From Oopsacas minuta (lineage: Eukaryota; Animalia; Porifera), in NCBI GenBank assembly GCA_024704765.1, contig JAKMXF010000013.1, forward strand, positions 1 through 64,000: a stretch of 64,000 bases of DNA, written 5' to 3'. Shown piece after piece: positions 6,701-33,882 of this stretch. How positions within the stretch are numbered: the stretch's first letter is position 1; every line of letters starts with the position of its first letter. The notes under the pieces are model-generated. The model made no database searches. It had not been told where the DNA came from and saw only the letters and a program-made list of their open reading frames with translations. The translations under genes were made by a program, and so were the position numbers.

Positions 6701-6720
6701 ATATATATATATATATATAT
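6701..6720. repeat. (AT)10 microsatellite
   Basis: Direct reading. Confidence 0.95.
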
Positions 6721-12610: not shown

Positions 12611-14723
12611 TTGAATTGCCTTGATATCTCCAAATCCGCTAAATATAAAATACGAAAATGATTATTGTTGGATAGGAAGTCGTATGTGGGAGTCGATTGG
12701 TGATATTGCCTTACCTAAATATTTGTGCAATTTGAGTTATGTTTCTTTTCACACCTTCCACATTATGTTGATAATTCCAAAATATCACATCCAATTTGAC
12801 CTAGATATGAGAAATGAGTTATTATACGATGGGAGATAATAGGTACCGATGCCTTCAGCTAGATCATCTTACGACATAGTCCACGATGCACAAAACCTCA
12901 GAGTAAATTGTCAATTTTGGACTAGGGATGATGTTAATGGCAAATGTTAGGGTTTCAGAGCACATTAAAATATCTATAAGTGGGGGAGGCCAGGATGGCC
13001 AAACTCCTAATAACACCCAATTCCCTATATATAATCCCAAATATAAATTTTAATTAACCAGAGATATGGAGAGGCATTACTTCCTACGACAATTTTTCGA
13101 TTGATAATTGAATATATTATTATCGCCCAAATGTTGTTGGTTGAATCAAAATTATAAAAGACATCCTTTTGGTAAATCACATAATTTCAATTCATTATAG
13201 CCATAAATGCGAGTTATTTTTCCGAATTGAGCACACAAATTAACAATACAAGAAAATTTAAGGTCGATTTACATACTAAAAAGTGCAAATTTCAATGGTT
13301 GTGGCATAATTATCTCTAGTATACCCAATTTCCCATTACCTACTTATAGAGGTTGATTTCAATGGAAATGAATAAAGGTGGAACAAAATTGCCACGCTTA
13401 GAGAGGTTTCCCATTTATCGAGAGAGGTTGTACTATAGGAGAAACGGTGCAATTTGCCCGAATAAATATATTGTGCGTTTGTAGAACAAGAAACTAATCA
13501 ACAATTGTAAAAATTTCTAGGATGTGCACAAATATTGGTCTAATAAGCATTAATTTGGTAAAATATGTTATTGTTGATAGCTTGAAATGCATCTTTCATT
13601 TCTTAGATTAAGTATAAACTAATCTATATAAAGAATAAATAGTACACATAGTATAAAAGTAGTCATGATAAAGTTGGCTCGTACTTGATTCACTGTAGGG
13701 GCCATGGATGATCATGAAACATGCTATGAAAATCCAAATATAAGCCGATATTTCTCTGATAATCGTTAGAAACATGTCAAATCACTATTGCGTGGGTATA
13801 ATGTATACCCAACTTCCCATACCTTTGTACTACATTTTGAAATGATATCATCATTCCGGAAAAAATGCACAGTTCATCCAACACAGCCACGCCCACATAA
13901 TACATCGGTCGACAACAAAATCCATAGCAAAAATTCACGCCTTACTATCTTATAAAGAGTAAGCTATGGGGTAAGGAAATCTATCTGAAGGAGTGGTCAC
14001 ATACGATTTCCCAATGTGTAATAACACGTTCTCAGGTATAGAAAAATGGGGGAAGGGAAATTTTACAATATCAACATAATGAGGAATGGCGTAAAAGCCA
14101 CAAAACTCACATCCCACAAATATTTTTAGATAAACAACAATTTGACCAATTGCCTCACTACTGACTCCGACATAATAATAAAATATTCTAGTATATTAAC
14201 TTTGGAAAATTAGGAGATATCAAGAAAGCACAATGGACCCAAGTTTCAAAACACGAACTGACAGTCTACAGTCCTATATTCAAGAGTCTCAAGAGTCTAT
14301 GATGATGTCATAATTTTACCATAGGTGTTTTCTTGCAGTATTCCTAAATTACCCTAGGCCCTTGACTATGATAAAGTACAATAGAAACCGGTAATATAAC
14401 TATTTAGTCGGCTGATGAAAAATTTGAAATCCCGATTGAAAAGTAAATCCAATATTCTATACGATCTGAGGATGAAAATATAGTACAAAAACCGATAGAA
14501 AACCAGGTGTAGGAAAAACAGGTTCGACTATATAAATTTATATCGAAAAGATGCGCAGCTTATTTCGCGTCACAACTTGAGGCCATTATATTTCAATTGA
14601 TGGTCAAGTCTATTGGATATATTTAAGCTCAATCCGAAGCACGAATGACTCAGGATACTGCAATTGAAGAGTAGTCACCTAGCAAGCGAAGTGGGTATTC
14701 AACAAGTACATGATCAAGACAAC

Positions 14724-15053
14724 CTCAACATCTGAAGGAAATAGATCTAAATTCTTACTCTGCTCATGATAAATATGAGGAGTATAGCGGTTACGTGGAT
14801 TACAAGCAATTTCATCTGCAAGCATCAAAATGATATTACTATCAGGTATCCCAAGACGTTTTACACTTCGATATACAGAAAGAGTATTAGAAAAGTGACG
14901 ATAATTAAACCAATATCTCGATGTTGAGACCAACAAAGCCCAATTATTAGTATAAGGGGAAGAATGAGAGTGTATATTGGCAGAAAAAGAAAAGCAGAAC
15001 AAATAACAAAAATAGAAAATTTGAAAATATGAGCTCATTTCTAAAAGATACAT
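14724..15053 (-). CDS. PIGK: GPI-anchor transamidase catalytic subunit, N-terminal exon (110 codons from ATG 15053; likely start ATG 15038)
   Basis: Signal peptide, then NNWALLVSTSRYWFNYRH.SN.LS.YRSVKRLGIPDSNIILMLADEIACNPRN (peptidase C13 PIG-K signature, with the Cys equivalent to human C92 that bonds PIG-T); ends DVE then GT donor at 14723 (phase 0). Confidence 0.95.
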
Positions 15054-16389
15054 AAAAAGTTGTTAGATTTCCTAGATAAATACAGTGCTGCCAAACCCAA
15101 ATGACAATAAACAGGGTGTTTTATGACAGCGGGAGGTTGTGTATTGGGCGAATAAATGCGGCAGGTCTGACGCAATCTCCTGATAACTTCCCATAAGGAG
15201 ACCTGTAGGTGAATTTTTCACATTCGATAACACTATATTTTCATGGCGTTTTTGAACAGCACTCACTCTGATAATAATTTGTACTCATTACCATATATTG
15301 AAAAATGAGTAGCGCATGCGCTGCAGTAATATATAATTGGAATTTTGGAAAAAGTAGGCTCTCAAATTACATCCTACCATAGTGGAATTAAATCTGCAGG
15401 TACTGATATATATTTTTTGAGTTTTGTTACCTATTTCTACTTCCTTTATTAGCAAAATCCCTAAATATTTTCTCAATTAACTTTATACTTTATTCAATGA
15501 GTGTTTCCTCTTGATTTCCCATTCTGTACCCTTGATTAGCCAAAATGCCAAAGATACCCAAATTGACAAAGAATAATGCTATAATGGTACTGACTGACAT
15601 ATTGTCTGAGTTTCGTTCAGTTACAGGTGATATGCCGGAGCTATATTTTCATGGCATGGAAAGCTTGGCTCTTTGGGTCCAGAATAGTTGAAACCTATAT
15701 CACTGGGAATAGCGATGAAATATCAAGAACTCTACTGACTAACCAAAAATATCTACAAGTACGTCAGCGTCATCAAAGCCTCAACGTGAACCCGAAATCC
15801 TTAAGCTATGAGATAGAGATATATCTGGCTATAATGTACAGGGACTGCGAAGACTTGTATCTGCGATGATAAAAGTGTCAACAGGTAAGTCAACGGTGTG
15901 AATGTATATAATTATATGGGTCACTGATTATATATCTCTGTATTTTAGGGAAAGGTATGTTTTTTTGGAATGATCCTTCTCTCAAACCACCTTTTTGGCC
16001 CGAAAGAGTCCCTTTCGAAAACATAAAAAGCGCANATCCCAGCAGAGCTGTTAATCTCAAGCACACTGTTATCTACTGCCTGTTGTTCAGTATGCATGTA
16101 GCATGGATATTCGTCTTCGCAACCATCTGGTCTGTTGTTGTCTCGTTTGGATTGAAAATAATCCAATGCAAGTTGGTTCTCCACTTGTCGTTTCATATAA
16201 GTACTTAACAGGTTGACCTGCAAGATATTTAATATTAGGCTATAAAGTTAATAATTATATTTATATATTATGCTAAGTACAGTGTACATTCATTAATCAT
16301 GGGCATTTATACATATATAATTAAATTCAATTAATAAGCCAATTTGGGGGGTGCGCACCTCCCTGAATCCCCCGGTGGATCCATCACTG

Positions 16390-16424
16390 CTAGTAAACAG
16401 GCCTTATTATAACCTAGGTCACGC
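16390..16424 (+). repeat. Inverted-repeat partner of 20401-20435 (putative TIR)
   Basis: ctagtaaacaggccttattataacctaggtcacgc vs reverse complement of 20401-20435 ctagcgaacaggccttattataacgttggtcacgc (30/35). Confidence 0.65.
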
Positions 16425-17800
16425 TTCAGCATATTTGCTCAAATTGATTGTTGCTGCCCCATTTACAGTAAGTTTATTCAGACAAGGGAAATGACTAGCC
16501 ATATTATCCAGTAACTGCCTCTCCCAAGTCGAAGTTTAAGTTGAAATGCCTTGATATGTTGATAGGGTTGGGTGACAAGTTAATTTTATCCCTGGAGCTT
16601 TGTGTTCAAATCATTAAGGTGTGTTGATATGTCCACCAAAAATGCTAAGTCCATCCACCAAGACTCATTTTGTAATTCAGGCACATGGTGGTTTTTCATT
16701 TCGACGAAAAGTTGGATTACATGTAAATGATTGTAGAATCTCTCCAAACAATTTCCTCTACTTAACTAGCGAACCTTGCTGTAATAGTCACATCACCATT
16801 TTCAGCATCTATTTCAATCATAGATTCTTTAAGCTGTCTGTGGTTTAGAGCTCTTGGATCGGATAAAGTTTATTGTATTTACAACAACATACATTACATT
16901 GTTCATACGGAGACGTTTACCGCATAGGTTTTCCTGGCGAATGATGGAATGAGACACGATTAGATAGGACTCTAATCCTAATATCGATAACTTATTCAAT
17001 GCAAGCGCAACTACGCCTTTTCTCTTCCCCAACATACAGGGAACACCGTCTGTAGTTAATTCAATGAGTTTCGAGAAAGTTACATTATATTTCAGCAACG
17101 AATTTTTCAGTTAAGCAAACATTTGTTCTCCAGTTATTATACCTTTCATACTACATAACTCTAATAAATCTTCTGTGATACTAAAATTAGTGTCTAAACC
17201 TCGGACGAATATTGGAAGCTGTGCAATATCACCCACATCAGTAGGTTCATCGAGACAAATTTAATAGACTTAAAAATTTTCTGAACATTTCATCAACACT
17301 GTTTCTATATTTTCTGCAAAGTCATCTAGTCTTTGAGGTACTGTAATACGGGATAGACTGATTATAGAAATTAGTTCTTTTCTCTCAGGATACAAAATCT
17401 CAGTGACAGTCTTAATACAGTCCATAACAAATTCTCCATCTGTGAAACACTTAAGATTTTTGGCTATAATATCACTTAGGGCAAAGCTAGCTCTTACTAG
17501 GCCTTCTACATCTCTATTAACCTATGTAAATATAATTTGCAGTGCCTGGAGGGATATTTTGAGACTTTCAACTTTTCCTTTCGTAAATTTAGCGTCAATT
17601 TGTCATATTTATCAGCATGCTTTACCATATAATGTGACCTAATGTTGTGTTCCTTGATTACTGCTACTGATTGATAACAAATAAGACAAATGGGTCTGTC
17701 TTCTTGAAAAATGAAAAAGAATCTTCGGTTCATTCATCATGGAATTCACGACATTCAAAATCAATTTATCTTCGCTTAGCAACGATATCAGTCATGTATT
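16425..17800 (-). mobile_element. hAT transposon (SPIN/Buster, GTF2IRD2/EPM2AIP1-like), degenerate
   Basis: BED-like CLICYQSVAVIKEHNIRSHY, KCFTDGEFVMDC, TTDGVPCMLG, HSIIRQENLC, WERQLL..HFPCL. Confidence 0.85.
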
Positions 17801-17868
17801 AACTATGGTATTCTGGAAATTGGCCAAATATGGAAAAGGTCAAATATAGAAAATGAAAATAAGAATTA

Positions 17869-18214
17869 CACTGGCCAACAACATATTCTTGGCTGATAAG
17901 TTGAGACTATTTCTGGGGTATATCGGGGTCACTGAGTTCGAAAATGGCACTAGTTCTGGTCAATTGGCTCTACTATTCGTGATATTGCAAAATTATGTTT
18001 TTCAGCATCCGTGAGTCTGTGTTCACTGATACAATATAGTATGTATGTATTACATTATAACTAGAATTGAACGTAAGTAATAAACAGATAATTTGAGATA
18101 TAATATGATCTGAATACTTATCAATCATGAACGAATGTTCTCTTATACGAATCCCTCTTGTGAGGTTCTTGGCGGCATCACGCACAAGGCTCCAGCAGTA
18201 ATATGCCAACATGT
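17869..18214 (-). mobile_element. Chapaev3 3' end (runs into gap)
   Basis: Close reverse complement of ~53045-53386; terminus CACTGGCCAAC preceded by TTA. Confidence 0.9.
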
Positions 18215-19190
18215 NNNNNNNNNNNNNNNNNNNNNNNNNNNNNNNNNNNNNNNNNNNNNNNNNNNNNNNNNNNNNNNNNNNNNNNNNNNNNNNNNNNNNN
18301 NNNNNNNNNNNNNNNNNNNNNNNNNNNNNNNNNNNNNNNNNNNNNNNNNNNNNNNNNNNNNNNNNNNNNNNNNNNNNNNNNNNNNNNNNNNNNNNNNNNN
18401 NNNNNNNNNNNNNNNNNNNNNNNNNNNNNNNNNNNNNNNNNNNNNNNNNNNNNNNNNNNNNNNNNNNNNNNNNNNNNNNNNNNNNNNNNNNNNNNNNNNN
18501 NNNNNNNNNNNNNNNNNNNNNNNNNNNNNNNNNNNNNNNNNNNNNNNNNNNNNNNNNNNNNNNNNNNNNNNNNNNNNNNNNNNNNNNNNNNNNNNNNNNN
18601 NNNNNNNNNNNNNNNNNNNNNNNNNNNNNNNNNNNNNNNNNNNNNNNNNNNNNNNNNNNNNNNNNNNNNNNNNNNNNNNNNNNNNNNNNNNNNNNNNNNN
18701 NNNNNNNNNNNNNNNNNNNNNNNNNNNNNNNNNNNNNNNNNNNNNNNNNNNNNNNNNNNNNNNNNNNNNNNNNNNNNNNNNNNNNNNNNNNNNNNNNNNN
18801 NNNNNNNNNNNNNNNNNNNNNNNNNNNNNNNNNNNNNNNNNNNNNNNNNNNNNNNNNNNNNNNNNNNNNNNNNNNNNNNNNNNNNNNNNNNNNNNNNNNN
18901 NNNNNNNNNNNNNNNNNNNNNNNNNNNNNNNNNNNNNNNNNNNNNNNNNNNNNNNNNNNNNNNNNNNNNNNNNNNNNNNNNNNNNNNNNNNNNNNNNNNN
19001 NNNNNNNNNNNNNNNNNNNNNNNNNNNNNNNNNNNNNNNNNNNNNNNNNNNNNNNNNNNNNNNNNNNNNNNNNNNNNNNNNNNNNNNNNNNNNNNNNNNN
19101 NNNNNNNNNNNNNNNNNNNNNNNNNNNNNNNNNNNNNNNNNNNNNNNNNNNNNNNNNNNNNNNNNNNNNNNNNNNNNNNNNNNNNNNNNN
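18215..19190. other. Assembly gap (N run)
   Basis: 976 N. Confidence 1.
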
Positions 19191-19524
19191 GACATATCTA
19201 CAAAAACACAACGCTGGATGTGAGTTTGAAGCCCAGAAATGTATTAAGGTGTTGTTGAAAATACAACAAGAAAATAAAATTCAGGCAGATATTCGGGACT
19301 TCATAATCAGTGATGATAAATGAAATGTGTAGAATACAATCTACTATTAGACTCATACAGAATGGACCTACAATTTTGAATGACTTTCTTATAACCGAAA
19401 TTCAAATAATGCTTATTATCATATGACTCAACATAAAAATTTCTTATATCCGAAATTATTCATGAGTTAATTTAATGTAAAGATGCGATTGCACTAAAAA
19501 CTTTCATATTTCCGAAACCTACCG
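19191..19524 (+). mobile_element. pogo/Tigger 3' end
   Basis: ...KIQADIRDFII C-terminus; terminus tccgaaacctaccg+TA complementary to the 5' TIR at 25390. Confidence 0.7.
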
Positions 19525-19989
19525 TAGTAATTTATTGCTGAACTTTTGGCTCACCCTGTATACTCAAACATTCCAATACAAAGTTCTAACCTCTAGTATT
19601 GTTTTCATATTGATATTGATTTCGAATGCTGGAGGTCAATTACACTATGGCAAACATATAGAGAAAAGACATTTTTGAGAAAAAGATCACTTCGAAATAC
19701 AATCACGGGGAGCTCAATAAATCCGGAAAACCGTGGCGCCCAAGATAAAATATATAGGACAAAAAAGCAAAATTCTTCAACACAATCGTAATCAAGAATA
19801 TACAGCACTAAGTCACCAAATATCATGAACTAACCCGAAAGAATCGTTCTACCACTGCGAATATAATTTCAGATTCGTAGTGGTAGAACGAAATACATCA
19901 GCTTCCTATTCTTATTCAACCATAAATCTCAATCTTTCCAAATCTACTCAAGTTTTTCAAAATATTTCCAAATATAGTCTCAGATTATT

Positions 19990-20316
19990 CTAAATACACT
20001 CAAGAGATGAGCTAGGATACTTGGGACAACTGGGAAGAAGGCAAGATACAGCGTTCTTATGTAGAATTGGTCGCCGAGAAATTTGTTGTAATGAGCCATC
20101 AGGTTGAGGCACATCAATTTCAGTGATGACATCTTCAGTACGAAAGTGATTAGAACAAACAAATGCATTTATTAGATCTTCAATATCCTCCCTGTGCAGA
20201 GCGCGTAGCCATTTTTCTCTAAGTTCAGAGTTTGAGGGTAATCTGAATACTGGTGTATATGGCTCCCCTGAATAATTACTCCGGCATCCAGGTGCAGAGC
20301 AAGTGTTAGGCATCAA
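19990..20316 (-). mobile_element. THAP zinc-finger domain, N-terminus of a THAP-bearing (P-like) transposase
   Basis: MPNTCSAPGC...VFRLP...REKW...VCSNHF...AV; putative TIR at 20401-20435 just upstream. Confidence 0.8.
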
Positions 20317-20763
20317 GGCTAATCAGTGATGAAACAGAATTGCAGAATAAGATAAAATTGTAAAATCCTAAATAACGAAAGGCTTGGGAATATAATCTCG
20401 GCGTGACCAACGTTATAATAAGGCCTGTTCGCTAGTGCGATATTTTGGACCATGGATATCGCTTAAGTCCATTAAATTTTACTTCAAATAATCATGTATT
20501 TGATGGTATTCACCAAATCGTGAACTTAAAAATTGTTCTTAGGTGATTTTAAAGATAATGGATGTCGTTGAAGGCTTGTAAAATAGTATTTCTTAGAAGC
20601 CCATAATATTTATATTAATTTATGAATCAACCATTTTGTTACATTCAAATTATTGAAACAACACATTTACGTACTCATCACCTGTTGTACCTTGTCCTCT
20701 TGTACTTTTATCCTAAGTTATTTAATCAACTTAGCTTTTATCTCTGTAATGCCGCTCTCCACC

Positions 20764-21619
20764 NNNNNNNNNNNNNNNNNNNNNNNNNNNNNNNNNNNNN
20801 NNNNNNNNNNNNNNNNNNNNNNNNNNNNNNNNNNNNNNNNNNNNNNNNNNNNNNNNNNNNNNNNNNNNNNNNNNNNNNNNNNNNNNNNNNNNNNNNNNNN
20901 NNNNNNNNNNNNNNNNNNNNNNNNNNNNNNNNNNNNNNNNNNNNNNNNNNNNNNNNNNNNNNNNNNNNNNNNNNNNNNNNNNNNNNNNNNNNNNNNNNNN
21001 NNNNNNNNNNNNNNNNNNNNNNNNNNNNNNNNNNNNNNNNNNNNNNNNNNNNNNNNNNNNNNNNNNNNNNNNNNNNNNNNNNNNNNNNNNNNNNNNNNNN
21101 NNNNNNNNNNNNNNNNNNNNNNNNNNNNNNNNNNNNNNNNNNNNNNNNNNNNNNNNNNNNNNNNNNNNNNNNNNNNNNNNNNNNNNNNNNNNNNNNNNNN
21201 NNNNNNNNNNNNNNNNNNNNNNNNNNNNNNNNNNNNNNNNNNNNNNNNNNNNNNNNNNNNNNNNNNNNNNNNNNNNNNNNNNNNNNNNNNNNNNNNNNNN
21301 NNNNNNNNNNNNNNNNNNNNNNNNNNNNNNNNNNNNNNNNNNNNNNNNNNNNNNNNNNNNNNNNNNNNNNNNNNNNNNNNNNNNNNNNNNNNNNNNNNNN
21401 NNNNNNNNNNNNNNNNNNNNNNNNNNNNNNNNNNNNNNNNNNNNNNNNNNNNNNNNNNNNNNNNNNNNNNNNNNNNNNNNNNNNNNNNNNNNNNNNNNNN
21501 NNNNNNNNNNNNNNNNNNNNNNNNNNNNNNNNNNNNNNNNNNNNNNNNNNNNNNNNNNNNNNNNNNNNNNNNNNNNNNNNNNNNNNNNNNNNNNNNNNNN
21601 NNNNNNNNNNNNNNNNNNN
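20764..21619. other. Assembly gap (N run)
   Basis: 856 N. Confidence 1.
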
Positions 21620-21781
21620 ATCCGGACTTACTTCGAAAATTGATAGATCGGATGCCAGCAGGAACGAGAAGATGTGTAGATTTGAAAGGAGGTTATATCG
21701 GAAAGTAATTAAACGCCTATGACACGTAACACTAATTATATAGGTATTTATCTAATAGGAAAAAACTTTCGGGACATACTG
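21620..21781 (+). mobile_element. Tc1-like 3' end
   Basis: LLRKLIDRMPAGTRRCVDLKGGYIGK*; terminus ...cgggacatactg+TA. Confidence 0.75.
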
Positions 21782-22234
21782 TAGATCGACCATAAGTTTC
21801 AGTTGAAATTATATCTTTACAAATGCAAGAAGTCTTGCTATTATAAATTCTATTAACTGTGTCTCATTCAGCATTTCAAATCTAGTATGGGCTTATTCCA
21901 TGTTTCGTAATACATTCTTGAAGTTACTCTGTGACAATTCACTATATCCTATATACTTTAACACTTATGTCATCCATTGAATTACTTGATTCTTATGGCT
22001 TGTCTGAAAAGTTTCAGTATAGGCATATAGTACTGTCATACACTGCCTTACAAATTATCAAATTATTACAGCAATTTTATTGTTGATGAAAATCTTTCTC
22101 ATGGTGTTCCATATTATATCTCGGAAGGTTTACAAATTTAACAAGCCAGTTTTTTCATTTTTCTTGTTATATTCCTATTTAAAGATGATTTTTTTGTAGT
22201 CATTCATGGATTGTTCAGTACGTAGAATCCGTGG

Positions 22235-22330
22235 CACAGTGGGAAAACATGGCTGATCAGGGTCAAATTTTGATACTCAAAACTTCAAGAAAGTCATATT
22301 TCTGAATTGATCATAGTTGAAAACATATAA
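22235..22330 (+). mobile_element. Transib-like terminus (non-autonomous)
   Basis: Starts CACAGTGGG, the RSS-heptamer-like Transib end; partner end not found. Confidence 0.4.
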
Positions 22331-24428
22331 ATGTGTATTTAGATACAATTTAAGGTTGTTCATGACTGTGGTATGAGCAGATAGTGAAGTGATTATCCTT
22401 GGGATAATGAAGAAAGTTATTTATTCTAATAATAGCTACTTTCAAAGTCATTTTCCAAAAGTTAGTTGGAGTGGAACATACACGTTTTGTGTATAATGTA
22501 ATCAATGTAGCTTTCATATAATCATAAAAGAAGGTTGGGTGCATACGCTCACAAAATAATTGGGCAATACTATTATTATCTAGGTACTAAATATACAATA
22601 TGCCAAGATCAACTAATTAGACATTGATCAAAGGTTTTTCGAGGGCACTCGAGTTCGCATGGTTTTATGGCTGAAACAGTTAGAGAAGATGTTTGCTGGA
22701 AATATTTACTAAATATAGGGTAGCGAAACATAGGAATCGTGACCATAATACCAACGGAAAGTGCAAGGTAAATTTTTCGAACAAAAAATTCCCTTCATAG
22801 AGGAATTTTGAAAGAAATATTATATTTGCGAATTATATAATCCGAAGATTGAAATGCACTAATGAAAATGAAAATACGATAAAATATTACATAGAAACAA
22901 CTAATATCCTGAAAATCAGTGCATCTCGAGGATCCTTTGTAAAATATTTATGGAAATTGAATAAGTTTCAACCAAATATCCTTGCATTCCTTTTTCGATA
23001 TCTGAAGAAAAATTTCTTCTCCCATGGGTTATTAATAACACAACCAAGTAAAAAAATCAAATTTTATCAGTCGTATCCAAAGCATAAACCATTATGAAAA
23101 GGATAACAAATTAGCATGAAAAATTGTGATGTTATTTGATGATAACATTAGACAGCAGCTCGTTCCATATTGCCAATTGAAGAAGCTTCTGAAGTAATGT
23201 AGAGGTATTGCGTAGAAAATTTGCAACCCCAGCCATTATATTAAAACTATTTATCACACCATTCGCCTCAACTAACTTCGACTTGTTATGACCCGAAGGT
23301 TCCATACCCCAAAAAGACCAACCAAGTCAAAAATTCTAGTAACTTTGTAAAATAGTGTGAATCGATAGTAGTGAGCTTATATTCAGTTTGATCTGATCAT
23401 TTTTGATCAGGCTCTCAATATTTAGGCACCCATCAGCAGGAATCGGTAGATATGCTGGAATTTCTGCTACCATTGGATTTCAATACTAGAAACCTGTGGA
23501 ACCCGTCCTGAAATAGATCCTCATACAGTCGTAACATTCCTTTACATGATTTACATTGACAGTTGAGTAGAGTAAATTCTTCTACCTGTACCTCGAAGTT
23601 AATAATAAGATTACAGCTTACTGGTTTGAGCTTATAGGTCTTATCCTAACTCCGTCGAATGATTTTATAAGTGTTGTTCTGCCTAGGAAATTGCATGCTT
23701 TTAAATAAGGTTGATGAGCCCATAATCTTGGCTCGCTTGAGTTTAGGAGATTTAAAGCTTCTTCTTAGGGATAATGTGGCTTTTAGAAACAAGATATATT
23801 TTAGTTTTACATTATTCCTCTTGGTTTGTGAGGCCGTGGTAAATGTTGCTTTATCCCATGTTTGTGAAGACAAATGTAGATATGAAAAACACTGTCCTCA
23901 AGGAGGTCGATGGCGTAGCAGATGAGGATGGATATATCAGAATCGGGTATAAATTCACTTTTTGAATCGGTGGAAGACTCATGATATTGGAATTGAGATG
24001 GGAAGAGATGTGCGGTAAATCACCTGCTCGGAAGATTTCTACTTACTCAATGTTCTGGAAATATCCTTCAAATGACTTGTAGACTTGCATCACTTCTTCA
24101 GTAAATGATGCCTTTAGAACAAATTCCATTTAGAAAGATTTATATAATTTTTGGATACCCGAATATTTTCGGTATTTGGAGGATTCTTTGGGGTTGTTCA
24201 AATTAATGTATCCAATTTCATTCAGGGGTTCATTTAGATACTCAGGGCCATGCACCTATAATGTCTAATTCACTTCATACCTCTAGAGTATACATTATGC
24301 ATTATAATATCCGAGACTCTAGGCTCGAAGAGAAATTTCGTAGACCTTGAGATAAGTTTCCCCAAATTTATGCTCCTGTGGGCGGGCCACATAGGACTGG
24401 ATAACAGTTATTTGATTGTTCAGAAATA

Positions 24429-25380
24429 CAGGGAGAGCCAAAAATTCTGCAACAATATTCAAATTTCATAAACTTTGTTAAGTAACCTTTTGGAGTGTTT
24501 ATCGGATTAAATATTCCATGTGACTCGAATATATATCATACTAAAGCATTGATACCCACCCTACTGCAATAATATCTGAAACTAAACTTATTGTAGCTCA
24601 GAGTTATCCAACTTTGGTTGAATAAACATCGACAAACAGAAATATTGAAATCACTCGGTTCGAAGAATAACACGCGATCTTTCATTTCTCGGACTATTTC
24701 TAGATTTAACAAGTGTGGGATAGTGAAAGATGTGCCATGTTCTGTTCGTACCACAGCAGCCAAGCGGAAGGTCAAGCAGATGATAATCAGAAAGCCGACG
24801 ATATCTTACAGACAAATTGCAAGTAAGACGTGATGCTCTATTACCTCGGTCCGGCGAATTTTCAAATACGATCTAGGTGTTAAATCATTCAAGAGAACTA
24901 AAACCGAAGCTCTAACTCCACTTACGATTGGGAAAGATTGCAACGTTGTCGTATGCTCGTGACCCGCCTCAAAAATGTTGGTCATGAAAATATTGTCTTT
25001 TCAGATGAGAAAATATGGTGCATCTAGGAAAAGTATACCAGTCCAAACTTTTGTGTATTCTAAATCGCGTAAAAGGTATCTGAGGAATGTACACATGGTG
25101 CAATAACTTTACATCCTAAGTCTGTGATGTTATAGGCTGGATTCGGCAAAAGGGAAAACAAGCATGGTTTTTGTGCCAGAGGGCGAAAAATTAACGCAAT
25201 TTCATACCAGAAACTGATACTATCTAAAAATATCCTACCTATAAGTCAAACCTTCATCAAGGGAGAAAATTGGTTGTTTCAGCAGGACTGAGCTCCAGCT
25301 CATACAGCTAAGATCAATCAGGGCTGGCTTTCTAGCAACATTCATGATTTTTTCAACAAGAATGAATGGCCCATGTATTA
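24429..25380 (+). mobile_element. maT(DD37D)-like Tc1/mariner element, 3'-truncated
   Basis: TA+CAGGGAGAGCC TIR; FISRTISRF...SVRT, IVFSDEK, WLFQQD*APAH, EWP. Confidence 0.8.
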
Positions 25381-25389
25381 ATATCAATA

Positions 25390-26648
25390 TAGTAGGTTTC
25401 GGATATAAGAAAGTTTACGATTTCACTTAATGTGGTCCTTATATCCGAAACTTTCATATATGCGAAATTCAATTATGACGTTTGCCTTTTACTTAATAAC
25501 TCAATATTATACTAGCTATTTTGGATGCATCTTTGAACCATGATTCATGATAAGAAATCAATGAGAGTGGCAAGAACTGTTCAAGAAAAACGGGATATAT
25601 TAGCTCAATGCGAATTGCCAGGTGCAAACCGAAGATCCATATACAATAACCTTGGAGTATCCGAGTGCTTGATCCCAAAATGGAAGAAGATCAGGTACCA
25701 GCTTGAAGAATGTCTGATGTTAAGGGAAGTAGAAAAGGAAAAAGGAAGGTGAGCACGGGGAAACTCTAGAAGATGGCCTTCTCACTATTTTGGACAATTG
25801 GAGGGAACGGGATGTAGAAGTCACCAGGCTAATGCTCAAAGTTAAAGCTGATGAAATAGCTGAAAGGGTAGGTGAACCAAAAGCGTCGGATATTAGCTGA
25901 GCCGTTAGCAAAGCAGACACAGCATTGTAGTTAAAATCCTGCAGGGAGAGGGTGCTGACGCTGATGAAGCACCGGCTGATAGATGGAAAAAAGAAAAACT
26001 ACCGGGAATAATGGAGGAGTACGGACTTAAATACATATACAATACTGATGAATTTGGGTTGTTTTACACCTGCGGGCCCAATCGGACGTGGTACGGAAAT
26101 CTGATGGTAGAAAAGGAACAAAGCAAAGTAAGTCCAGGGTATCAGTGTTGGTGGATGCCAATATGGATGGATCTGATAAACTTCCACATCTGATTATCAG
26201 TAAAAGCAAGAACCCAAAGAACAAAAAATTGCCGCTACCAGTAGAATATACCCACCAAAAGAAAGCATGGATAAATACACAAATATTCAATGACTGGTTG
26301 ATACAGGTTAATAACAAGATGAAGCGAAGAAGGAGAAAAATACTGATACTTGCGGATAATTTTACTGCACACCGCACACCACCACCAATGAGTAATGTTC
26401 GTCTCCAGATGTTGTGTGAGAATACAACTTCTATCTGCCAACCAATGGATGCTGGCATAATTGCAGCCTTGAAGAAAATGTTCGGGTACAGAGCTGCTGA
26501 ACATAAAATTACGATGCTTGACAGCGGATTAAAACCAACAATCACCCTTTACAGGGCCTTGATAATGCTGAAACATAGTTGAGACTTAATATCACCCAAG
26601 ACAATTCTAAACTGCTTTAGCAAGGCATTCAATCTGGGTCGTGATAGC
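25390..26648 (+). mobile_element. pogo/Tigger (CENP-B-like DDE_1) transposon, frameshifted
   Basis: Psq-type HTH, IYNTDEFGLFY, KSRVSVLVDANMDGSDKL, KKAWIN..IF.DW, LILADNFTAH, NTTSICQPMDAGII; cut at the single N at 26649. Confidence 0.9.
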
Positions 26649-26649
26649 N

Positions 26650-27402
26650 GTATATTAGCAACAGGAAAGTGAATACTGAAGGCCTTGATAATGTATGCCG
26701 AGAGACTTACGAATCCATTTTAACCAATTTTTCATGGGCACATGTAACCCCTACTTTACATAAACTTCTAGCCCATGCATCACAAATAATTGCAGATCAT
26801 AACGATGGGTTTGGCTTAGAAGATTTGTCTAAAGAAGGCCCTGAATCTTGTAATAAATTGGTCAGGGGATACCGTGAGAGACTCCCAAGAAAATTTAGCT
26901 TTGAGGACGACGTTAAAGATGTGGTCGTCAGGCTTATCTCTCAAAGTGATCGAATTATAGCATCCTTTCGTAATATTACCAAAAACGATTGGGAGCCAGA
27001 TCTATCTGAGTTAAAGAGCTGTCAAGATATTTTGGTGAATTCTCTAATTATAAATACGTTATAGTTTGTAGTTCAATGAACGGTAGGTCATTTTAACAAG
27101 AAATATGGTTTCATAAGTTGATAAACATGTACATTAAATAGTGTTAATAATATCAAAACATAAAGCATTCAATTTCTGAACACATAGCTGACAAATTGGC
27201 TTAATTAAAATCGATAAAAAAATCAAAATATTTTGAAATGTGACAATGACGTCATTACTTTCACACCCAAAGACTTAGAAAAAATCTAGTTACGTCAATC
27301 GATTCCTTGAGTATGATTCCCCATATGTCAATAATATAGTTTAATACGTTATCTAGTGCCCTAATACCTACTTCCAGGTTTTAGCCATTTCGTGCAACTG
27401 TG
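26650..27402 (+). mobile_element. Transib/RAG1-like transposase C-terminal fragment with right terminus
   Basis: FSWAHVTPTLHKLLAH (Zn-binding H..H) and LSKEGPESCNKLVRGYRERL (cf. RAG1 SEGNESGNKLFRRFRKM); minus-strand terminus CACAGTT-10 nt-GCTAAAACC at 27402. Confidence 0.8.
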
Positions 27403-28459
27403 ATGAACACGATAAGTTTACCACTTCGTTTTAAACAATTCTCGCACTCAAATCGAGATTTCAGCACTATATTGACGTTATACAAAACACATTTTAACGG
27501 CTATATTTGGTTAGTAGAGAAACCAAATAGGAAATCTCTACTATGTTTTTCAAAGAAAATTAAAATGAAATCGGCCAACGAATGATTTTTCATATAAATG
27601 GGCTAATTAGGACTTGTTTGTTGATTTTGAGTGATAATTTGCCAAAGTTTTAGCATCGTTGAGTTAGAATTTTATTAGCAATTATTGCTGATACTTATCA
27701 CTGAAACTGTGATGATAGAGTGAATTTTAAAAACTGGAAACAATATTGGGGTTCTGCCGGTATTTTTTGCCAGTTTTTGACACGAGATTACTGGTGTCAA
27801 TAAATTTGGGTGTATTTTATCAATCTTTGGCACCTAGGAAATTTTTTACGGAAAATCGAATAATTGCTACAAATTCTAATTTCAAAATTGCAAAGTGGGT
27901 GAATTTCAATTAACGATTTTGAATTCTTACTCAACCAAGATTTTTTCAAATTAATTATCTATTAGTAGGTGCTACTTTATAATGTTTATTTTTGGGAAGC
28001 AATTTCCATCAAACAGTAAGGGCGTAGCTCTCTCTGTTTGTAAACAGGACGGCCTGCACGGAGCTAGTAACATTATTATGGTAACTCAGCAGAATGTGGG
28101 ACAATAAGGTCTAAAACCACTGCTTTATGACACAGTAACTTTCAAAATTACTATACCATAAGCAATTACAGTCGTAGTGTCACGTTCGTAACAAAAGTGA
28201 GCACCTTAATTTTGCCACTTGGATAACCAATTATCGCAATAGAATCGAGATTTCAGTAACTTTTTGGCATCATAAATTGACAATTTTCCCGGACGTTTTC
28301 GCTTAAAGGATAAATATAGTTGTCAGTAGCTAATTGTTCACAGGGTCCAAGTATACATATAAAGTATGAAAAGGCAATTATTCTATGTATGGTTGGAAGC
28401 TCGGAATTGATTGAAGAAACTGGAAGACACCCCAAAGGCTGATTTTTAATATAGGGGTA

Positions 28460-28740
28460 TTTTGGCCTGGCTGGGATGAGTTGGAGTCTTGGCCAAAATT
28501 CATATATATGACGAAATTATGAAATCATTGTCAACAATTTAGATTTTCAAAAAAATCAAGTTGCTGCTTAGCCAATAAATGTTATAGGGTTATTATTTGA
28601 AAGACAGGTAATTCATAATATGACAAATGTGCGGACGTTATCACTTTGAACAAATTCAAACTTATTATTAAAGTATTACGTCATCATGGATTTACAAATT
28701 TGAAAATTTTCCAAAATTCCAGAAGAAGTTTAAGAATCTC
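28460..28740 (-). repeat. MITE-like family A, diverged copy
   Basis: cttagccaata...tattacgtcatcatg, reverse-complement similarity to 6400-6600. Confidence 0.5.
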
Positions 28741-29410
28741 TTAATATACGATGTAGAAGTGCCGAAATTACTAACCTAAAGCTACGTAAGAGTTCCAGTA
28801 TTACCATAAAATGCCATAAATTCCAGTGAACCATGGATAATAAAAATGAAATCCCGAAAAAGATTAACCTCGAATAACGTAGGCCAAGTATATCCCGCCA
28901 ATGACAAATGTAGATGTTTCAAACTAAAGCAAAACAACTTTGGCCAGTTGCAGCTACCTAGCAAGCGTGGGCAAGTATATATCTGAAATAATATTTACAT
29001 TGCCATACAGTTATTGTGAGAAAACTGTACCGTAGGAATGTATATCAGTGTATTTCTACATAATACAGATGATTTAAGAAATTCGATTGGGAGAAATCCA
29101 TGATTGATCTAACAAACTTCTTTCATCGATTTATGATACCTTAACTCACCCAAACGATTCACTTGATTTATGGTATAAATTGTGAAACCAAGTCAAATTA
29201 AACATCCTCCGAATCATGAGAGACAAGTATGGTATGAAACGAAGCCTAAATGCCCTAATGATAACATATTTGAATTAATATAATCGTGATTAGCATATTA
29301 AACAAAGACTGGTAGTTAATTATAAAACACTGAAAATTTAGTAGTTAAGATGATGCGGGAAGCAAAAAAATTGTATACTATACAACTTTATTCAATGCAA
29401 GGTTCTATAG

Positions 29411-29465
29411 CAGGGGTTTTCAACCTAGGGGTCGCGCGAAGGCTTTCTAGTTGGGTCGCAAAAAG
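29411..29465 (+). mobile_element. hAT-type (Charlie/Buster) MITE end
   Basis: CAGGGGTTTTCAACCT...GGGGTCGCG. Confidence 0.55.
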
Positions 29466-29837
29466 TTCAGATAATTTACATAACATAATTAATATTTACT
29501 GATTAACAAGTCAAAAATTATTTAAATTATCAACTTTTAGCTGAATTCAAAATGCATTGTCAGTCTATTGCGCGTGCATTGCTATGTGCAATGTACAGGG
29601 TGTAACAAAATTGATGCCTTATTGTTTACAATTAATTATTTATAAACACAGCCACATCAAGTATCTACGGATATATACTATTTGCTATATCTATGTTAAT
29701 TCTATTCATAACTAATGATATTTTATTATATTGCAAGGTATGACTCACATTTAACCACAAATATGCTAACTCATAATTTCATATTTATTAGCTAATTTTG
29801 CGATGGTGAAAGAGCATGCTATTCGAACAAGACACAN

Positions 29838-30389
29838 CCTCAGTAGCAAGGAAGTCAGAATTCCCAAGCAGGTGTGCCAGTTCTTCTGCTTTCTCCTTCA
29901 GCATTGGACCACTTACTCTCTGACCTTTAGAAGTCACTAACTCAAACCATTGATTTAACGCTTCGTCCACCTCAGGATCTTTTCCCTTTCGCTCTCTCTT
30001 CACGTTAGTTAGTTGTTTTTTGGGATGATTCATAGTATGTGACCATTTTAACCTCAACTGCTCTTCTTCATTTGTCGATCAAATGAGAGTAGTCCTTGGT
30101 ATAGATAATAATTCAGCACGTTGCCGCTGACTTATACCTGGAGGCTGTAATGCAACATCGTCTAGTAATTTAATCTTTTGTGCAAGTGTCAAATCAGTTC
30201 TTTGGGTCATAAAATAATAATATAATCTAAATTATATACAAACCTAATCAAATTTTTGATAAACATATAGACTTCAAAAAAATAATGGTCCGATTAACCG
30301 AAAAATGTTAAATATTACTCCTGGATTAGATTCCGTCAAGGAGAAAATGGTCCGATTAACCGAATTGTCCGATTAACCGGAGTCGACTG
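29838..30389 (-). mobile_element. Tigger-like 5' half
   Basis: TIR CAGTCGACTCCGGTTAATCGGAC; DPEVDEALNQWF...GPMLKEKAEELA (CENP-B HTH); truncated at the N at 29837. Confidence 0.85.
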
Positions 30390-33054
30390 TATATGGAAAA
30401 TTAATCCTAAATCACGACATAGAAGATATTAGGTTAAAAGTTTGTGTAACTAATGCGAATTTTCAGGAAATTAAGTAGTACACTCATGGCAATTTTAATA
30501 TTAATTTCTACGTAAGTTTTTGGGTGTACTACCTTTGGTTGAAAGAGTGTATTAAATTGCAGCTTAGAAAATAATGTATAAATAATAGGAAGGATGGTAG
30601 TGGGTGAGAGGTATATTTAAACCTTGGTCGTTGGTAGAGTTCAACTGATAGTCTCTCAACGCAGGTAAAAAATATTGTAAAACAATCCATGTCTGAAAAA
30701 GGAGTCGTGAAAGCAAAGAGGTCGCTATGCCACAGGTCGTTCAATACAGGCTGTATAATAGTACCAAATTTTGTTAGAACTAGTTGAAGTTCGAATTATC
30801 AAAATATATTAAATGTGCTATACGTAATAGCTGTCATGGGAAATCAAAATTGCTAAATTAATGGAAGGACATTGTATGGGATTAATGTAGGGTTTAAAAC
30901 CCTTGATTCCTCAAGAAATGAAAAGTATATTCCAAGCCTCCCTTTAAGGTAATCTCATTCTTAGATCATAGGAATATTGATAATATATTAGGATTCCCTT
31001 TAACAAATCAAGTGTTTTGTATGATAAATTGCACAAATAGTTGTAATAAGAAAGAGATATATTTAAATGAGTTAGAACCCATTAATTTTTATTTTCGAGA
31101 AGTTATAGAGGCTTATAGAAACTAGTTGAAATGGAATACCGACAATTCACACCTAATTTGATTGGTGAATTGATTTGACATTATTTCAATTTAGATTATA
31201 GGGAAAATACTGAAATTAATCACAAGTAATAACTCTGGCATAACTAACTACTATTGTAAACTACTAGTACTTGGAAGTCGTTTCTATTTCGTTAAAAGCT
31301 GAATTCATCATAGCAGAATAAGATAATATAATCGCAGTTAAATGTTATATTCACTTATTTCTTTTAAGGTGGAATTTTGTTATTTGACTAATATCCGATT
31401 GGCTTCTGAGAGTTCACGGTATTAGTGAGTCGGCCCCCACCAAAAGTTCACCGAACGCCCGAACATAGAGCTTAGAGGGCAATTGATTGCAAGTCAAATC
31501 GATGTCATAATCCAAGGGTTTCCATGGCTCTATTGTAGGCAAACAACGCAACTTAACCGCTGATCCCTTCCTAGAACCAGGGCCGGATTAAGGAATAGGG
31601 CCTCGTACTTTGAGGGGTAAATTTGACTATATGAATGGGTTAAACCAATCCAGTATTTTTAATTTCCCTGTTAGACCATCTAAAAATACATTACATTATT
31701 TTCATACCGAATTTCTTCGAAAACTAGGATGGAGGATGATAGTTTTAGTGAGTTAATTTATAGTATATTGTTTAAATCTTCGATTATCTCATCAATTTCT
31801 TTCTGGGTATATCTTGTATATTTAAACTCCATCATTTATTTGCTTGTCCGAATTGATAGAGGAACTGGTTTGAGATACAGACTTGAAATTTGATACGGGG
31901 TGTGGAATGACGTTTACTAATGAAACTATTCACAAAATTAGTATTAACAAAACTCAAAATTAGTCAAACTTAAATATATCACACAAGAATGTAGAGATTA
32001 GTTTAGAAAATATTGCAACTACTAATGTCCAATATTCTGAAACTTGTGTACGTAGTTTAAATTGAAATTTCGAAACAAGTGTAAGATTTTTTAATAGTCA
32101 ATATATTTGTAGAAGTAAACTAGAAATATTTTAGATATTCATAAATGTCTCTAAGTCTTCAATTTGATATGTAATTTCTAACCAATTTCAAAGAATGGGA
32201 AGGCCATGAAATTTATATTTCAAGTGTGCTGAGTTGAATTTTGTGGTAACCTCACAATCATTTTTACTGTCTTTATAAAATCTCAAGTTACAAGAATCTA
32301 CTGGCAGGGCCGGGTAAAGGTGGATGCAACCCATGTAGAAGCAGAGGTTCCCCGAATGAAGCGTCCCCTAAATATTAGGTCAAGGGCGTTGTCGTTCCGG
32401 ACGGAACTCTAAAGCCACTGCAATTTAGAATCACCTTAATGCTCAACATTCCTATATATATTGTAAAATTAATTCAGTAGCGTTAAATATTTTCCAAACA
32501 AATATATATTTATCAATCACATTGATGGATATAAGCATATTGATACTGTCTATTTCATTTCATGCAGGGAGGATGACACTTTAAATGCTCGCCCCTAACC
32601 CCGAGAAGTGTATCATAGTACACGAGTAGAATGTCCAGACCAGATCCAGAGAGGATAAGTCAACAGGACGATATATCCATGGCAACGCTTCTTCTTGCAT
32701 TTTAACCACAATATCATGCATATACATTGAAATGATCTACGGACCGAATTTCTCAGGGCGCGCAGTCGACGGAGATTAGTCTCCCAATCTATGGTCCTGG
32801 GGCTCACTCCCTAACAATATTCCTAATGAGTGCTAAAGCCTCCCCTATTGAATAGCATTTTCGGATCTGGTACTAATTCCATTTATCCTAAATAATAGTA
32901 TAGTATAAATAATCAGAAAGCTGATTATTCAGAGAGCTTTGACGAACATGAATTATGGGCGATTATTCGACACAATATGGCAAATCAAATTTAGTCTCTT
33001 CAAGCGGAACTACAAATAAAACTCTATGTAAATAGTATTAGAGAATTTATATGT

Positions 33055-33882
33055 TCAGAATCTATGAGGAAAACATACCAAAACATCAAACAAACATGTA
33101 GATATTATGAAAAATGAATATAAACTTCCAAGCAGGAAGTAAGGATATAGATACGGGGTTGTCGAATTAAAGTAAGATATTCTGAAGAAATAGTGATCAA
33201 CAAAATGATATGCTTGAATTATTTCTACTTCTTTCGATATCAAAATAGAACACCTTATATCCGAATTATTTACACAGCGAAATATGTTATGAAATCCCTG
33301 TAGATGTACATGTCTACCACTACCAAAAAACTCTAGGATAGGTAGCGTATGTAATTCCTCTTCCAAATCAGCATTCATATATTGTGGGGTACTTTGTATC
33401 AGATGAGGATTGAAGGACTCAAACATGCTCATCAATGACAAGTTTGAATGAGGATGAATATTTTCTAAATAAATCAACATGAAATAAGTCCATTTATCCA
33501 TAAGATGTAAACCAATATTATGATCAAAATTATGTGACAGTGAATCTTCACCAAGTATGCTGCTTCCAGCAGACAGTATCCCTGAAACACTGATTGAATC
33601 AAACATCGTGGTGGCTTGACAACTATCAACTAAAAAGAGAATATGGTTAAACCTTTGATTCCTCAACATTTGAACCAATGTATCGTGGAATTCGACATTA
33701 AGTAGTTCTTCATTATCTTGAAACTTGAGAAAACAATTTCCTCCATGACCAGATATATAGATCAATAGGTTACTATTTTCATTTAATAACAAAGATTTAG
33801 AACGTGGAGTATATTGATGATGACGTCCAGTTAAAATACGAAAGAAATTCTCAACACTCACTTCATATCCTTTATAATCTAC
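33055..33882 (-). CDS. PIGK: GPI-anchor transamidase catalytic subunit, C-terminal exon (275 aa + TGA)
   Basis: Acceptor ttatttAG| at 33884-33883, then VDYKGYEVSVENFFRILTGR; catalytic SGHGG and DSCQA; FLKFQD, GEDSLSH; C-terminal hydrophobic TM segment; no disruptions. Confidence 0.95.
   Translation of the reverse strand, partial: VDYKGYEVSVENFFRILTGRHHQYTPRSKSLLLNENSNLLIYISGHGGNCFLKFQDNEELLNVEFHDTLVQMLRNQRFNHILFLVDSCQATTMFDSISVSGILSAGSSILGEDSLSHNFDHNIGLHLMDKWTYFMLIYLENIHPHSNLSLMSMFESFNPHLIQSTPQYMNADLEEELHTLPILEFFGSGRHVHLQGFHNIFRCVNNSDIRCSILISKEVEIIQAYHFVDHYFFRISYFNSTTPYLYPYFLLGSLYSFFIISTCLFDVLVCFPHRF

What the first reader, a model, noticed from the sequence alone, without database searches (positions are those of the whole stretch)
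14724..33882. PIG-K gene with its two intact exons in permuted order: candidate trans-spliced or back-spliced protein-coding gene
Seen: both exons are on the minus strand and undisrupted. They abut exactly in the protein: ...FPSDVE (GT donor at 14723) and (AG acceptor at 33883) VDYKGYEVSVENF..., phase 0. This matches the human DDVEVDYRSYEVTVENF stretch with no overlap or gap and gives a ~380-385-aa PIG-K with signal peptide, His/Cys dyad and TM anchor. But the acceptor exon lies ~18 kb 5' of the donor exon, so ordinary cis-splicing cannot join them. I found no second C-terminal exon in 1-14723 and no second N-terminal exon in 33883-64000. Established: PIG-K is normally a single-copy gene required for GPI anchoring, so a functional mRNA is expected; exon trans-splicing is known from Drosophila mod(mdg4)/lola and Giardia split introns. 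Inference: (a) intermolecular trans-splicing of separate transcripts; (b) back-splicing of a read-through transcript into a circle that is reopened, analogous to permuted tRNAs; (c) two halves of a large tandem duplication, each with a long intron leaving the window; or (d) contig mis-ordering across the two N gaps, giving one intron of at least 45 kb with the OTU gene nested antisense. Option (d) is a serious alternative.
Basis: partly seen in the sequence, partly recalled or inferred. Interest (0 to 1): 0.9.

Follow-up and report, generated by a model that had tools for sequence, protein, structure and literature searches.

The report
Sponge PIG-K exons misordered by scaffolding
An ordinary, expressed two-exon GPI-transamidase (PIG-K) gene of the glass sponge Oopsacas minuta has its exons in the wrong order in the draft scaffold, most likely because repeat-flanked, unbridged scaffold joins between them were ordered wrongly, not because of exotic splicing.

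Summary
Two intact minus-strand exons encode a complete PIG-K. They abut exactly at human residues 118/119, and the C-terminal exon lies 5' of the N-terminal exon. An RNA-like run of the same project contains the predicted joint GATGTTGAG|GTAGATTAT, so one spliced mRNA exists.

The genomic order is not established. The window is the first 64 kb of a 104-kb Oopsacas minuta scaffold (GCA_024704765.1). That assembly was built with SPAdes, SSPACE (Illumina reads; paired-end and Nextera mate-pair libraries were sequenced) and GapFiller.

Five scaffold joins separate the exons: two N gaps and three single Ns. I tested three of them. No public contig bridges any of the three, and their flanks are repeats at roughly 8-40 times single-copy depth. 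At the single N at 16035, contigs continue with 161-247 unlike letters on both sides.

Five relatives on long-read contigs all have the normal exon order, the same phase-0 intron site, and introns of 6.5-53 kb. I found no complementarity between the intron halves and no read-through RNA.

Verdict: scaffolding artefact, about 0.8. Trans-splicing of a truly permuted gene is not excluded, about 0.07. First readers flagged two other scrambled-exon genes in this assembly; these are unchecked. Interest is low.

The parts
14724..15053 (-). PIG-K exon 1 (signal peptide plus the N-terminal part of the C13 domain). The ORF starts at 15053. The likely start codon is the ATG at 15038-15036, with an acceptor-like AG at 15042-15041 just upstream.
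   Evidence: human PIGK residues 40-118, E 6e-30. One search shows the YAG 2 nt before the ATG here and in four of five relatives.
14722..14723 (-). GT splice donor after ...GATGTTGAG
   Evidence: The same GTTGAG|GTT donor is present in five relatives.
33055..33882 (-). PIG-K exon 2: the rest of the C13 domain with the catalytic His and Cys, the C-terminal hydrophobic segment, and the stop codon at 33055-33057
   Evidence: human PIGK residues 119-312, E 3e-53
33883..33884 (-). AG splice acceptor (ttatttag|GTAGAT)
   Evidence: Five relatives have the same tttag| acceptor at the same codon.
32934..33054 (-). 3' UTR. RNA-like contigs end near 32934, and depth is 0 further downstream.
   Evidence: X4 record 25; depth table
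18215..19190 (.). Assembly gap 1. It is not bridged. Its left flank is a repeat end.
20764..21619 (.). Assembly gap 2. It is not bridged. Both flanks are multi-copy repeats.
16035..16035 (.). A single N that is an unresolved scaffold join, not one unknown base
   Evidence: contigs of X1-X3 run on for 161-247 unlike letters on both sides. Flank depth is about 16-25 times single copy.
36862..36862 (.). A single-N join 3 kb upstream of the exon-2 acceptor. A transposon 3' end starts abruptly right after it and the transposon body is missing.
17865..18214 (-). 3' end of a ~2.1-kb terminal-inverted-repeat transposon family, running into gap 1 (reference copy about 51232-53390, + strand)
   Evidence: (94% identity to 53041-53390), and (depth about 40 times single copy)
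19191..20763 (.). A 1.6-kb island between the two gaps. It carries a THAP-domain ORF (19990-20316, minus strand). Its right part is high-copy, and part of it is present as two variants.

Best explanation
This is a normal, single, expressed PIG-K (GPI8) gene with one long, transposon-filled, phase-0 intron that is spliced in cis. Its 5' end probably receives a spliced leader.

The permuted exon order is most likely an artefact of the draft Oopsacas minuta assembly. The 18-kb block carrying exon 1 is the left end of scaffold JAKMXF010000013.1. It is attached to the rest only through read-pair links across repeats: two N gaps, a 1.6-kb repeat island and unresolved single-N joins. Its true place is most likely to the right of exon 2, either at one of the other unresolved joins or beyond the scaffold's other end.

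Shown: the exons, the mRNA joint, that the tested joins are unbridged and repeat-flanked, and the normal order in relatives. Inferred: that a join is false, and where the block really belongs.
For: 1. The exons abut exactly and one spliced RNA exists.
2. The assembly method is error-prone in repeats. It used SPAdes hybrid assembly, SSPACE super-scaffolding with Illumina reads (paired-end and Nextera mate-pair libraries were sequenced), Pilon and GapFiller (PMC10280926). [quoted passage not shown]
3. The window has 10 joins in 64 kb, in an assembly whose N50 is 0.67 Mb.
4. No contig of four runs bridges gap 1, gap 2 or the N at 16035. Flank depths are about 8-40 times the single-copy level of about 38. 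At 16035, contigs diverge on both sides.
5. The left edge of gap 1 is the 3' end of a transposon with several copies in the window alone.
6. The window starts at base 1 of the scaffold, so the exon-1 block is a terminal piece held by one chain of repeat joins.
7. Five relatives on long-read contigs have the order exon 1 then exon 2, the same donor and acceptor, and introns of 6.5, 7.6, 17.0, 21.2 and 53.1 kb. A long cis intron is therefore the family norm here.
8. Unbroken sequence already shows at least 10 kb of intron after the donor (14723 down to 4716) and at least 3 kb before the acceptor (33883-36861).
9. The DNA-like run X3 shows single-copy depth over exon 2.
Against: No read or contig shows the alternative (normal) order, so the false join is inferred, not seen.

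If the exon-1 block belongs beyond the scaffold's right end, the intron would be at least about 85 kb. That is longer than in any relative (maximum 53 kb) and far above the genome's mean intron of 341 bp.

The block is 18 kb and the rest of the scaffold is 85 kb, too large for a simple swap caused by paired-end contamination alone.

First readers report two other scrambled-exon genes in this genome. That fits a sloppy assembly, but it would also fit a real genome-wide phenomenon in an animal group that has spliced-leader trans-splicing.
Confidence: 0.8

Rival explanations
1. The genomic order is really permuted. Exon 1 and exon 2 are transcribed as separate pre-mRNAs and joined by intermolecular (exon-to-exon) trans-splicing, in an animal group that already uses spliced-leader trans-splicing.
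For: - The scaffold order as deposited.
- An exact, abundant mRNA joint.
- Only one copy of each exon in the window.
- Glass sponges have spliced-leader trans-splicing (PMC10282587).
- An acceptor-like AG sits just before the start codon.
- Two other scrambled-exon notes in this genome, both unchecked.
Against: - None of the three tested joins between the exons is verified, and all are repeat-flanked.
- No complementarity between the two intron halves beyond 14 nt, unlike the Giardia split introns as I recall them.
- All five relatives use plain cis order at the same site.
- An unpaired acceptor in a spliced-leader organism would be expected to take the leader, yet the only loose end listed at the acceptor (15 further loose ends were not shown) leads into exon 1.
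- Exon-level trans-splicing is very rare in animals, whereas scaffold errors in such assemblies are common.
Confidence: 0.07
2. The region is, or was assembled from, a tandem duplication or two haplotype copies. Second copies of one or both exons lie outside the window in cis-compatible order, and the window shows the inner C...N neighbours of an N-C-N-C array.
For: - 40 kb of the same scaffold (64001-104059) and the rest of the genome could not be searched.
- A collapsed tandem repeat gives a cyclic assembly graph that can be linearised in permuted form.
- Part of the island between the gaps occurs as two variants at equal depth in X1 and X3.
Against: - Exon 2 has single-copy depth in the DNA-like run X3: 35.8, against 34-61 in the flanks.
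- No other O. minuta PIG-K protein is in the protein collection. This is weak evidence, because the gene is simply not annotated.
- Each intron would have to exceed 14.7 kb on one side and 30 kb on the other.
Confidence: 0.08
3. A read-through transcript running from exon 2 to exon 1 is back-spliced into a circle that provides the exon 1-exon 2 reading frame.
For: Only the scaffold order itself and the existence of the joint.
Against: - RNA-like contigs end about 120 nt after the stop codon.
- X4 depth is 0 at 32300-32905 and at 17450-17849, so no read-through is seen. Contigs can miss rare RNA.
- Exon 2 looks like a terminal exon with a 3' UTR.
- Exon 1 has a leader-type acceptor at its start, which fits a linear capped mRNA.
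Confidence: 0.02

Closest known systems
PIGK / GPI8, the catalytic subunit of GPI transamidase (peptidase family C13)
   Same: The C13 domain is split across the two exons. The catalytic His and Cys sit at the human His164 and Cys206 positions. There is an N-terminal signal-like segment and a C-terminal hydrophobic segment. Alignment with human PIGK runs over residues 40-312.
   Different: Nothing functional differs. The gene has a single very long intron and is not annotated in the deposited record.
Repeat-mediated or mate-pair mis-scaffolding in short-read/hybrid draft assemblies (SSPACE-type super-scaffolds)
   Same: The N gaps and single-N joins are flanked by multi-copy transposons. The misplaced block sits at a scaffold end. 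Orientation is kept while order is changed. The project sequenced Nextera mate-pair libraries and scaffolded with SSPACE.
   Different: The false join itself has not been seen. The blocks are larger than those usually swapped by paired-end contamination.
Exon trans-splicing of Drosophila mod(mdg4)/lola and C. elegans eri-6/7 (recalled from general knowledge, not checked here)
   Same: Coding exons that cannot be joined in cis on the reference sequence still appear joined in mRNA.
   Different: In those cases the genomic arrangement is verified by finished sequence and genetics. Here the arrangement rests on unbridged gaps, and relatives have normal cis order.
Giardia split introns (trans-spliced Hsp90 and dynein genes; recalled from general knowledge)
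   Same: Two gene halves joined exactly at a canonical donor and acceptor.
   Different: As I recall them, the Giardia halves pair through long complementary stretches in the intron halves. None is present here.
Spliced-leader trans-splicing in glass sponges (Aphrocallistes vastus, PMC10282587)
   Same: An acceptor-like YAG 2 nt before the PIG-K start codon, here and in four of five relatives.
   Different: This concerns only the 5' end of exon 1. It does not join coding exons, and the leader itself was not seen here.

Membership tests
PIGK/GPI8 (GPI transamidase catalytic subunit, peptidase C13) | Peptidase_C13 domain | tested here: met
   PF01650 hits both exons above the curated cut-off of 22.8 bits: 41.5 and 63.5 bits, on profile positions 1-64 and 73-237.
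PIGK/GPI8 (GPI transamidase catalytic subunit, peptidase C13) | Closer to PIGK than to legumain | tested here: met
   Best solved-structure matches are human and other GPI-anchor transamidase chains (E 3e-53 and 6e-30). Legumains score E 4e-06 and 9e-10.
PIGK/GPI8 (GPI transamidase catalytic subunit, peptidase C13) | Catalytic His-Cys dyad | tested here: met
   In the alignment, GHGG His aligns with human position 164 and DSCQ Cys with position 206.
PIGK/GPI8 (GPI transamidase catalytic subunit, peptidase C13) | Transamidase activity within the GPI-T complex | not testable with these tools
   Needs biochemistry or complementation.
Exon-level trans-spliced gene (mod(mdg4)/lola/eri-6/7 type) | A verified genomic arrangement that forbids cis-splicing | tested here: not met
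   Gap 1, gap 2 and the N at 16035 are not bridged by any contig, and their flanks are repeats. The two other single-N joins between the exons (26649, 29837) were not tested. The arrangement is unverified rather than disproved.
Exon-level trans-spliced gene (mod(mdg4)/lola/eri-6/7 type) | A mature mRNA that joins the two exons | tested here: met
   The X4 contig joint at 33882|14724.
Exon-level trans-spliced gene (mod(mdg4)/lola/eri-6/7 type) | Separate primary transcripts for the two parts | not testable with these tools
   No read-laying runs were left. It needs nascent or long-read RNA data.
Giardia-type split intron | Extended base-pairing between the two intron halves | tested here: not met
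   The longest inverted match between 11724-14723 and 33883-36861 is 14 nt, at chance level.
Scaffold mis-join | Joins inferred from read pairs only and flanked by repeats | tested here: met
   with the assembly methods.
Scaffold mis-join | Direct evidence for the correct adjacency | not testable with these tools
   Loose ends at the gap edges match nothing else in the window.

The most novel reading that the evidence does not exclude
The scaffold order is right. In Oopsacas minuta the single-copy, presumably essential PIG-K gene has its two coding exons in permuted order about 18 kb apart. A functional mRNA is made by intermolecular exon trans-splicing in a lineage that already has spliced-leader trans-splicing. 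This could be one of several scrambled genes (MAP3K19 and EML5/6 were flagged by other first readers).
Probability: 0.07. Interest if true: 0.85.

Novelty: not a real feature. Interest (0 to 1): 0.15.

Why it matters
If the permuted order were real, it would be a rare case of exon-level trans-splicing of a gene expected to be essential, in a sponge. It would also suggest that scrambled genes occur in an early-branching animal.

As it stands, the value is practical.
- This part of the O. minuta assembly cannot be trusted for order across N gaps or even across single Ns.
- PIG-K is present, intact and expressed, but it is not annotated. That is relevant to claims about missing core genes.
- Other scrambled-exon findings in this genome should be treated as assembly suspects until long reads confirm them.

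Tried and rejected
1. Apparent synteny: blocks upstream of exon 1 in relative L006 matched window 40578-41097 and 38924-38987 in collinear order. This would have placed the missing exon 1 between the OTU gene and exon 2. It turned out to be a repeat family, also present at 61665-62115 and elsewhere. Rejected.

2. The idea that 17865-18214 and 36863-37014 (98.6% identical, inverted) are the two ends of one transposon copy, which would link the exon-1 block to the 36862 join. Both are 3'-type ends with different flanks, so they are separate copies. Rejected.

3. OTU gene as a synteny anchor. It lies 191 kb upstream and antisense in one relative, 43 kb downstream on the same strand in another, and on a different contig in a third. 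Uninformative.

4. Loose-end sequences at the gap edges were searched for in the window with up to 5 mismatches. No match, so the true neighbours could not be identified.

5. Bridging the gaps with public contigs. No contig bridges them.

6. Complementarity between the intron halves. None found.

7. Reading the scaffold beyond 64000. Look-ups of earlier notes by sequence and by words for other PIG-K pieces came back blank.
Full report
WHAT IS THERE

On the minus strand, window 14724-15053 encodes the N-terminal 110 residues of a GPI-anchor transamidase (PIG-K/GPI8). Window 33058-33882 encodes the remaining 275 residues, followed by a stop codon at 33055-33057.
- Pfam Peptidase_C13 hits profile positions 1-64 on the first piece and 73-237 on the second.
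- Against solved structures, the first piece aligns with human PIGK 40-118 (E 6e-30) and the second with 119-312 (E 3e-53). The two pieces abut without gap or overlap.
- GT follows the first piece and AG precedes the second.
- Counting along the alignment puts the catalytic His and Cys at the human 164 and 206 positions.
- tblastn finds one copy of each exon in the window.

Because the gene is on the minus strand, exon 2 lies upstream of exon 1, so the order in the sequence as given is permuted.

One refinement: the ATG at 15038 is the likely start codon. It is preceded at 2 nt by an acceptor-like ...cttttag. Four of five relatives show the same YAG-NN-ATG arrangement, and their N-termini align from that methionine.

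THE mRNA

Four public runs from one sample hold this locus.
- Run X4 behaves like RNA-seq. Word depth is 200-1000 on exon 2, 0 beyond 33916, and 0 below 32905.
- Run X3 behaves like DNA. Depth is an even 35 or so through the exon, the acceptor and the flanks.
- One X4 contig leaves the window at 33884 with the letters CAACATCTGAAGGAAATAGATCTAAA. These match 14726-14751 exactly and nowhere else in the window. The two bases before them fit either side of the joint.

A spliced exon 1-exon 2 RNA therefore exists. Every hypothesis on the table predicts it, so it does not discriminate between them.

WHERE THE SEQUENCE COMES FROM

The neighbouring OTU-family protein (41244-43541) is recorded on NCBI assembly GCA_024704765.1, record JAKMXF010000013.1, length 104,059. 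Its record coordinates equal the window coordinates. The window is therefore the first 64 kb of that scaffold, and the exon-1 block is the scaffold's left end.

WGS prefix JAKMXF is the glass sponge Oopsacas minuta (PMC10280926). According to that paper:
- Corrected PacBio reads and Illumina reads were assembled with SPAdes.
- The assembly was super-scaffolded with SSPACE using Illumina reads. Paired-end and Nextera mate-pair libraries were sequenced.
- It was polished with Pilon and treated with GapFiller.
- Mean intron length is 341 bp.
- RNA mapping for gene prediction allowed introns of at most 5 kb.

No gene is called on exon 2 in the deposited annotation.

ARE THE LETTERS BETWEEN THE EXONS CONTINUOUS?

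The window has ten joins: two N runs (18215-19190 and 20764-21619) and single Ns at 3074, 4715, 16035, 26649, 29837, 36862, 48447 and 56678. Five of them lie between the exons.

I laid the four runs on 15850-21849.
- No contig bridges gap 1, gap 2 or the N at 16035.
- At 16035, contigs from X1, X2 and X3 run on for 161-247 letters unlike the scaffold on both sides. This 'single N' is an unresolved join.
- Single-copy depth in X1 is about 38. The flanks are far above that: about 650 left of 16035, about 1800 at 17850-18049 (left edge of gap 1), 1000-1300 at 20050-20649 (left of gap 2), and about 570 right of gap 2.
- Self-comparison shows that 17865-18214 is the 3' end of a ~2.1-kb terminal-inverted-repeat transposon, whose reference copy is at about 51232-53390.
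- The same kind of end begins abruptly right after the single N at 36862, with its body missing. That join is only 3 kb upstream of the exon-2 acceptor.
- The island between the gaps carries a THAP-domain ORF, and part of it is present as two variants.
- Loose ends at the gap edges match nothing else in the window.

So the order of exon 1 relative to exon 2 rests entirely on read-pair links through multi-copy repeats. Paired-end contamination of mate-pair libraries is a documented cause of wrong contig order, especially in fragmented regions (bioRxiv 10.1101/025650).

RELATIVES

The closest proteins to both exons sit on long-read metagenome contigs in ENA (0.13-1.7 Mb, 53-78% identity). They are unnamed and are presumably other glass sponges.

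In all five, exon 1 precedes exon 2 on the same strand. All five share the donor GTTGAG|GTT and the acceptor tttag| at the same codon. Record coordinates give these intron lengths:

| Contig | Intron length (nt) |
|---|---|
| ctg126402 | 6,474 |
| ctg28088 | 7,567 |
| ctg49081 | about 17,000 |
| ctg17085 | about 21,200 |
| ctg83258 | about 53,100 |

The introns are full of transposon ORFs. A long, repeat-laden cis intron at this site is therefore the norm for the group. In the window itself, unbroken sequence already gives at least 10 kb after the donor and at least 3 kb before the acceptor.

TESTS OF THE EXOTIC READINGS

- Giardia-type pairing of intron halves: the longest inverted match between 3 kb on each side is 14 nt, at chance level.
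- Back-spliced circle: RNA-like contigs end about 120 nt after the stop codon, and X4 depth is 0 at 32300-32905 and at 17450-17849. No read-through is seen, with the caveat that contigs miss rare RNA.
- Tandem duplication: exon 2 is at single-copy depth in X3. Exon 1 depth and the remaining 40 kb of the scaffold could not be examined.

WEIGHING

For the artefact reading:
- The tested joins are unbridged and repeat-flanked.
- The exon-1 block is a terminal piece of a small scaffold.
- The assembly pipeline is prone to order errors.
- All five relatives have the normal cis arrangement.
- The prior rarity of exon-level trans-splicing is very high.

Against it:
- The correct adjacency was not seen.
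- Placing the block beyond the scaffold's right end implies an intron of at least about 85 kb. Placing it at an internal join such as 36862 would give about 18 kb.
- Other first readers flagged two more scrambled-exon genes in this genome. Neither has been checked. They fit a sloppy assembly but could also hint at real biology in a lineage with spliced-leader trans-splicing (PMC10282587).

My estimates are: scaffolding artefact 0.8; hidden second exon copies or a collapsed duplication 0.08; real permutation with trans-splicing 0.07; circle model 0.02; the rest unassigned.

VERDICT

The gene is an ordinary, intact, expressed PIG-K. The permuted order is most likely not a real feature. The project's own PacBio reads could settle the question.

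Noticed in passing
window 16035; also 3074, 4715, 26649, 29837, 36862, 48447, 56678: Single Ns in this assembly are scaffold joins, not single unknown bases. At 16035, public contigs continue for 161-247 unlike letters on both sides. At 36862, a transposon end starts abruptly with its body missing. At 3074, the preceding 132 nt are a 99% inverted copy of 57050-57181.
   Followed up: partly
window 51232-53390 (+); ends at 17865-18214 (-) and 36863-37014 (+): A ~2.1-kb DNA transposon family with long, imperfect terminal inverted repeats and a degenerate ORF series (starting MDSKGIRRCCLNDPDDFCYICGE...). Depth suggests about 40 copies in the genome. Related ends occur in a relative's PIG-K intron (L004 4768-5295).
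   Followed up: partly
window 15036-15042 (-); L004, L006, L007, L008 just upstream of the exon-1 ATG: An acceptor-like YAG lies exactly 2 nt before the PIG-K start codon here and in four of five relatives. This fits spliced-leader trans-splicing, reported for the glass sponge Aphrocallistes vastus. The leader itself was not observed.
   Followed up: partly
window 33055-33882 (L011 1815-2639): PIG-K is not annotated in the deposited O. minuta record, and no O. minuta PIG-K protein appears in the protein collection. Gene-absence statements for this genome may miss genes with long introns or broken scaffolds.
   Followed up: partly
window 41244-43544 (+): The intronless OTU-family gene has orthologues (46-64% identity) in the same unnamed relatives. 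It shares a contig with PIG-K in two of them, but at 191 kb (antisense, upstream) and 43 kb (same strand, downstream). Local gene order around PIG-K is therefore not conserved.
   Followed up: partly
window 19280-19448: Two sequence variants (7 substitutions plus 1 indel) occur at equal depth in runs X1 and X3, each at about single-copy depth. This is either a two-copy segment or divergent haplotypes inside the island between the gaps.
   Followed up: no
window 8277-9321, 16829-17098, 19990-20316, 26088-27064, 45686-46219, 56742-57181: The window is almost entirely transposon debris: Tc3/mariner-like, hAT/DUF4371-like, THAP/P-element-like and pogo-like pieces. Only two host genes lie in 64 kb, an unusual island in a genome described as compact.
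   Followed up: no
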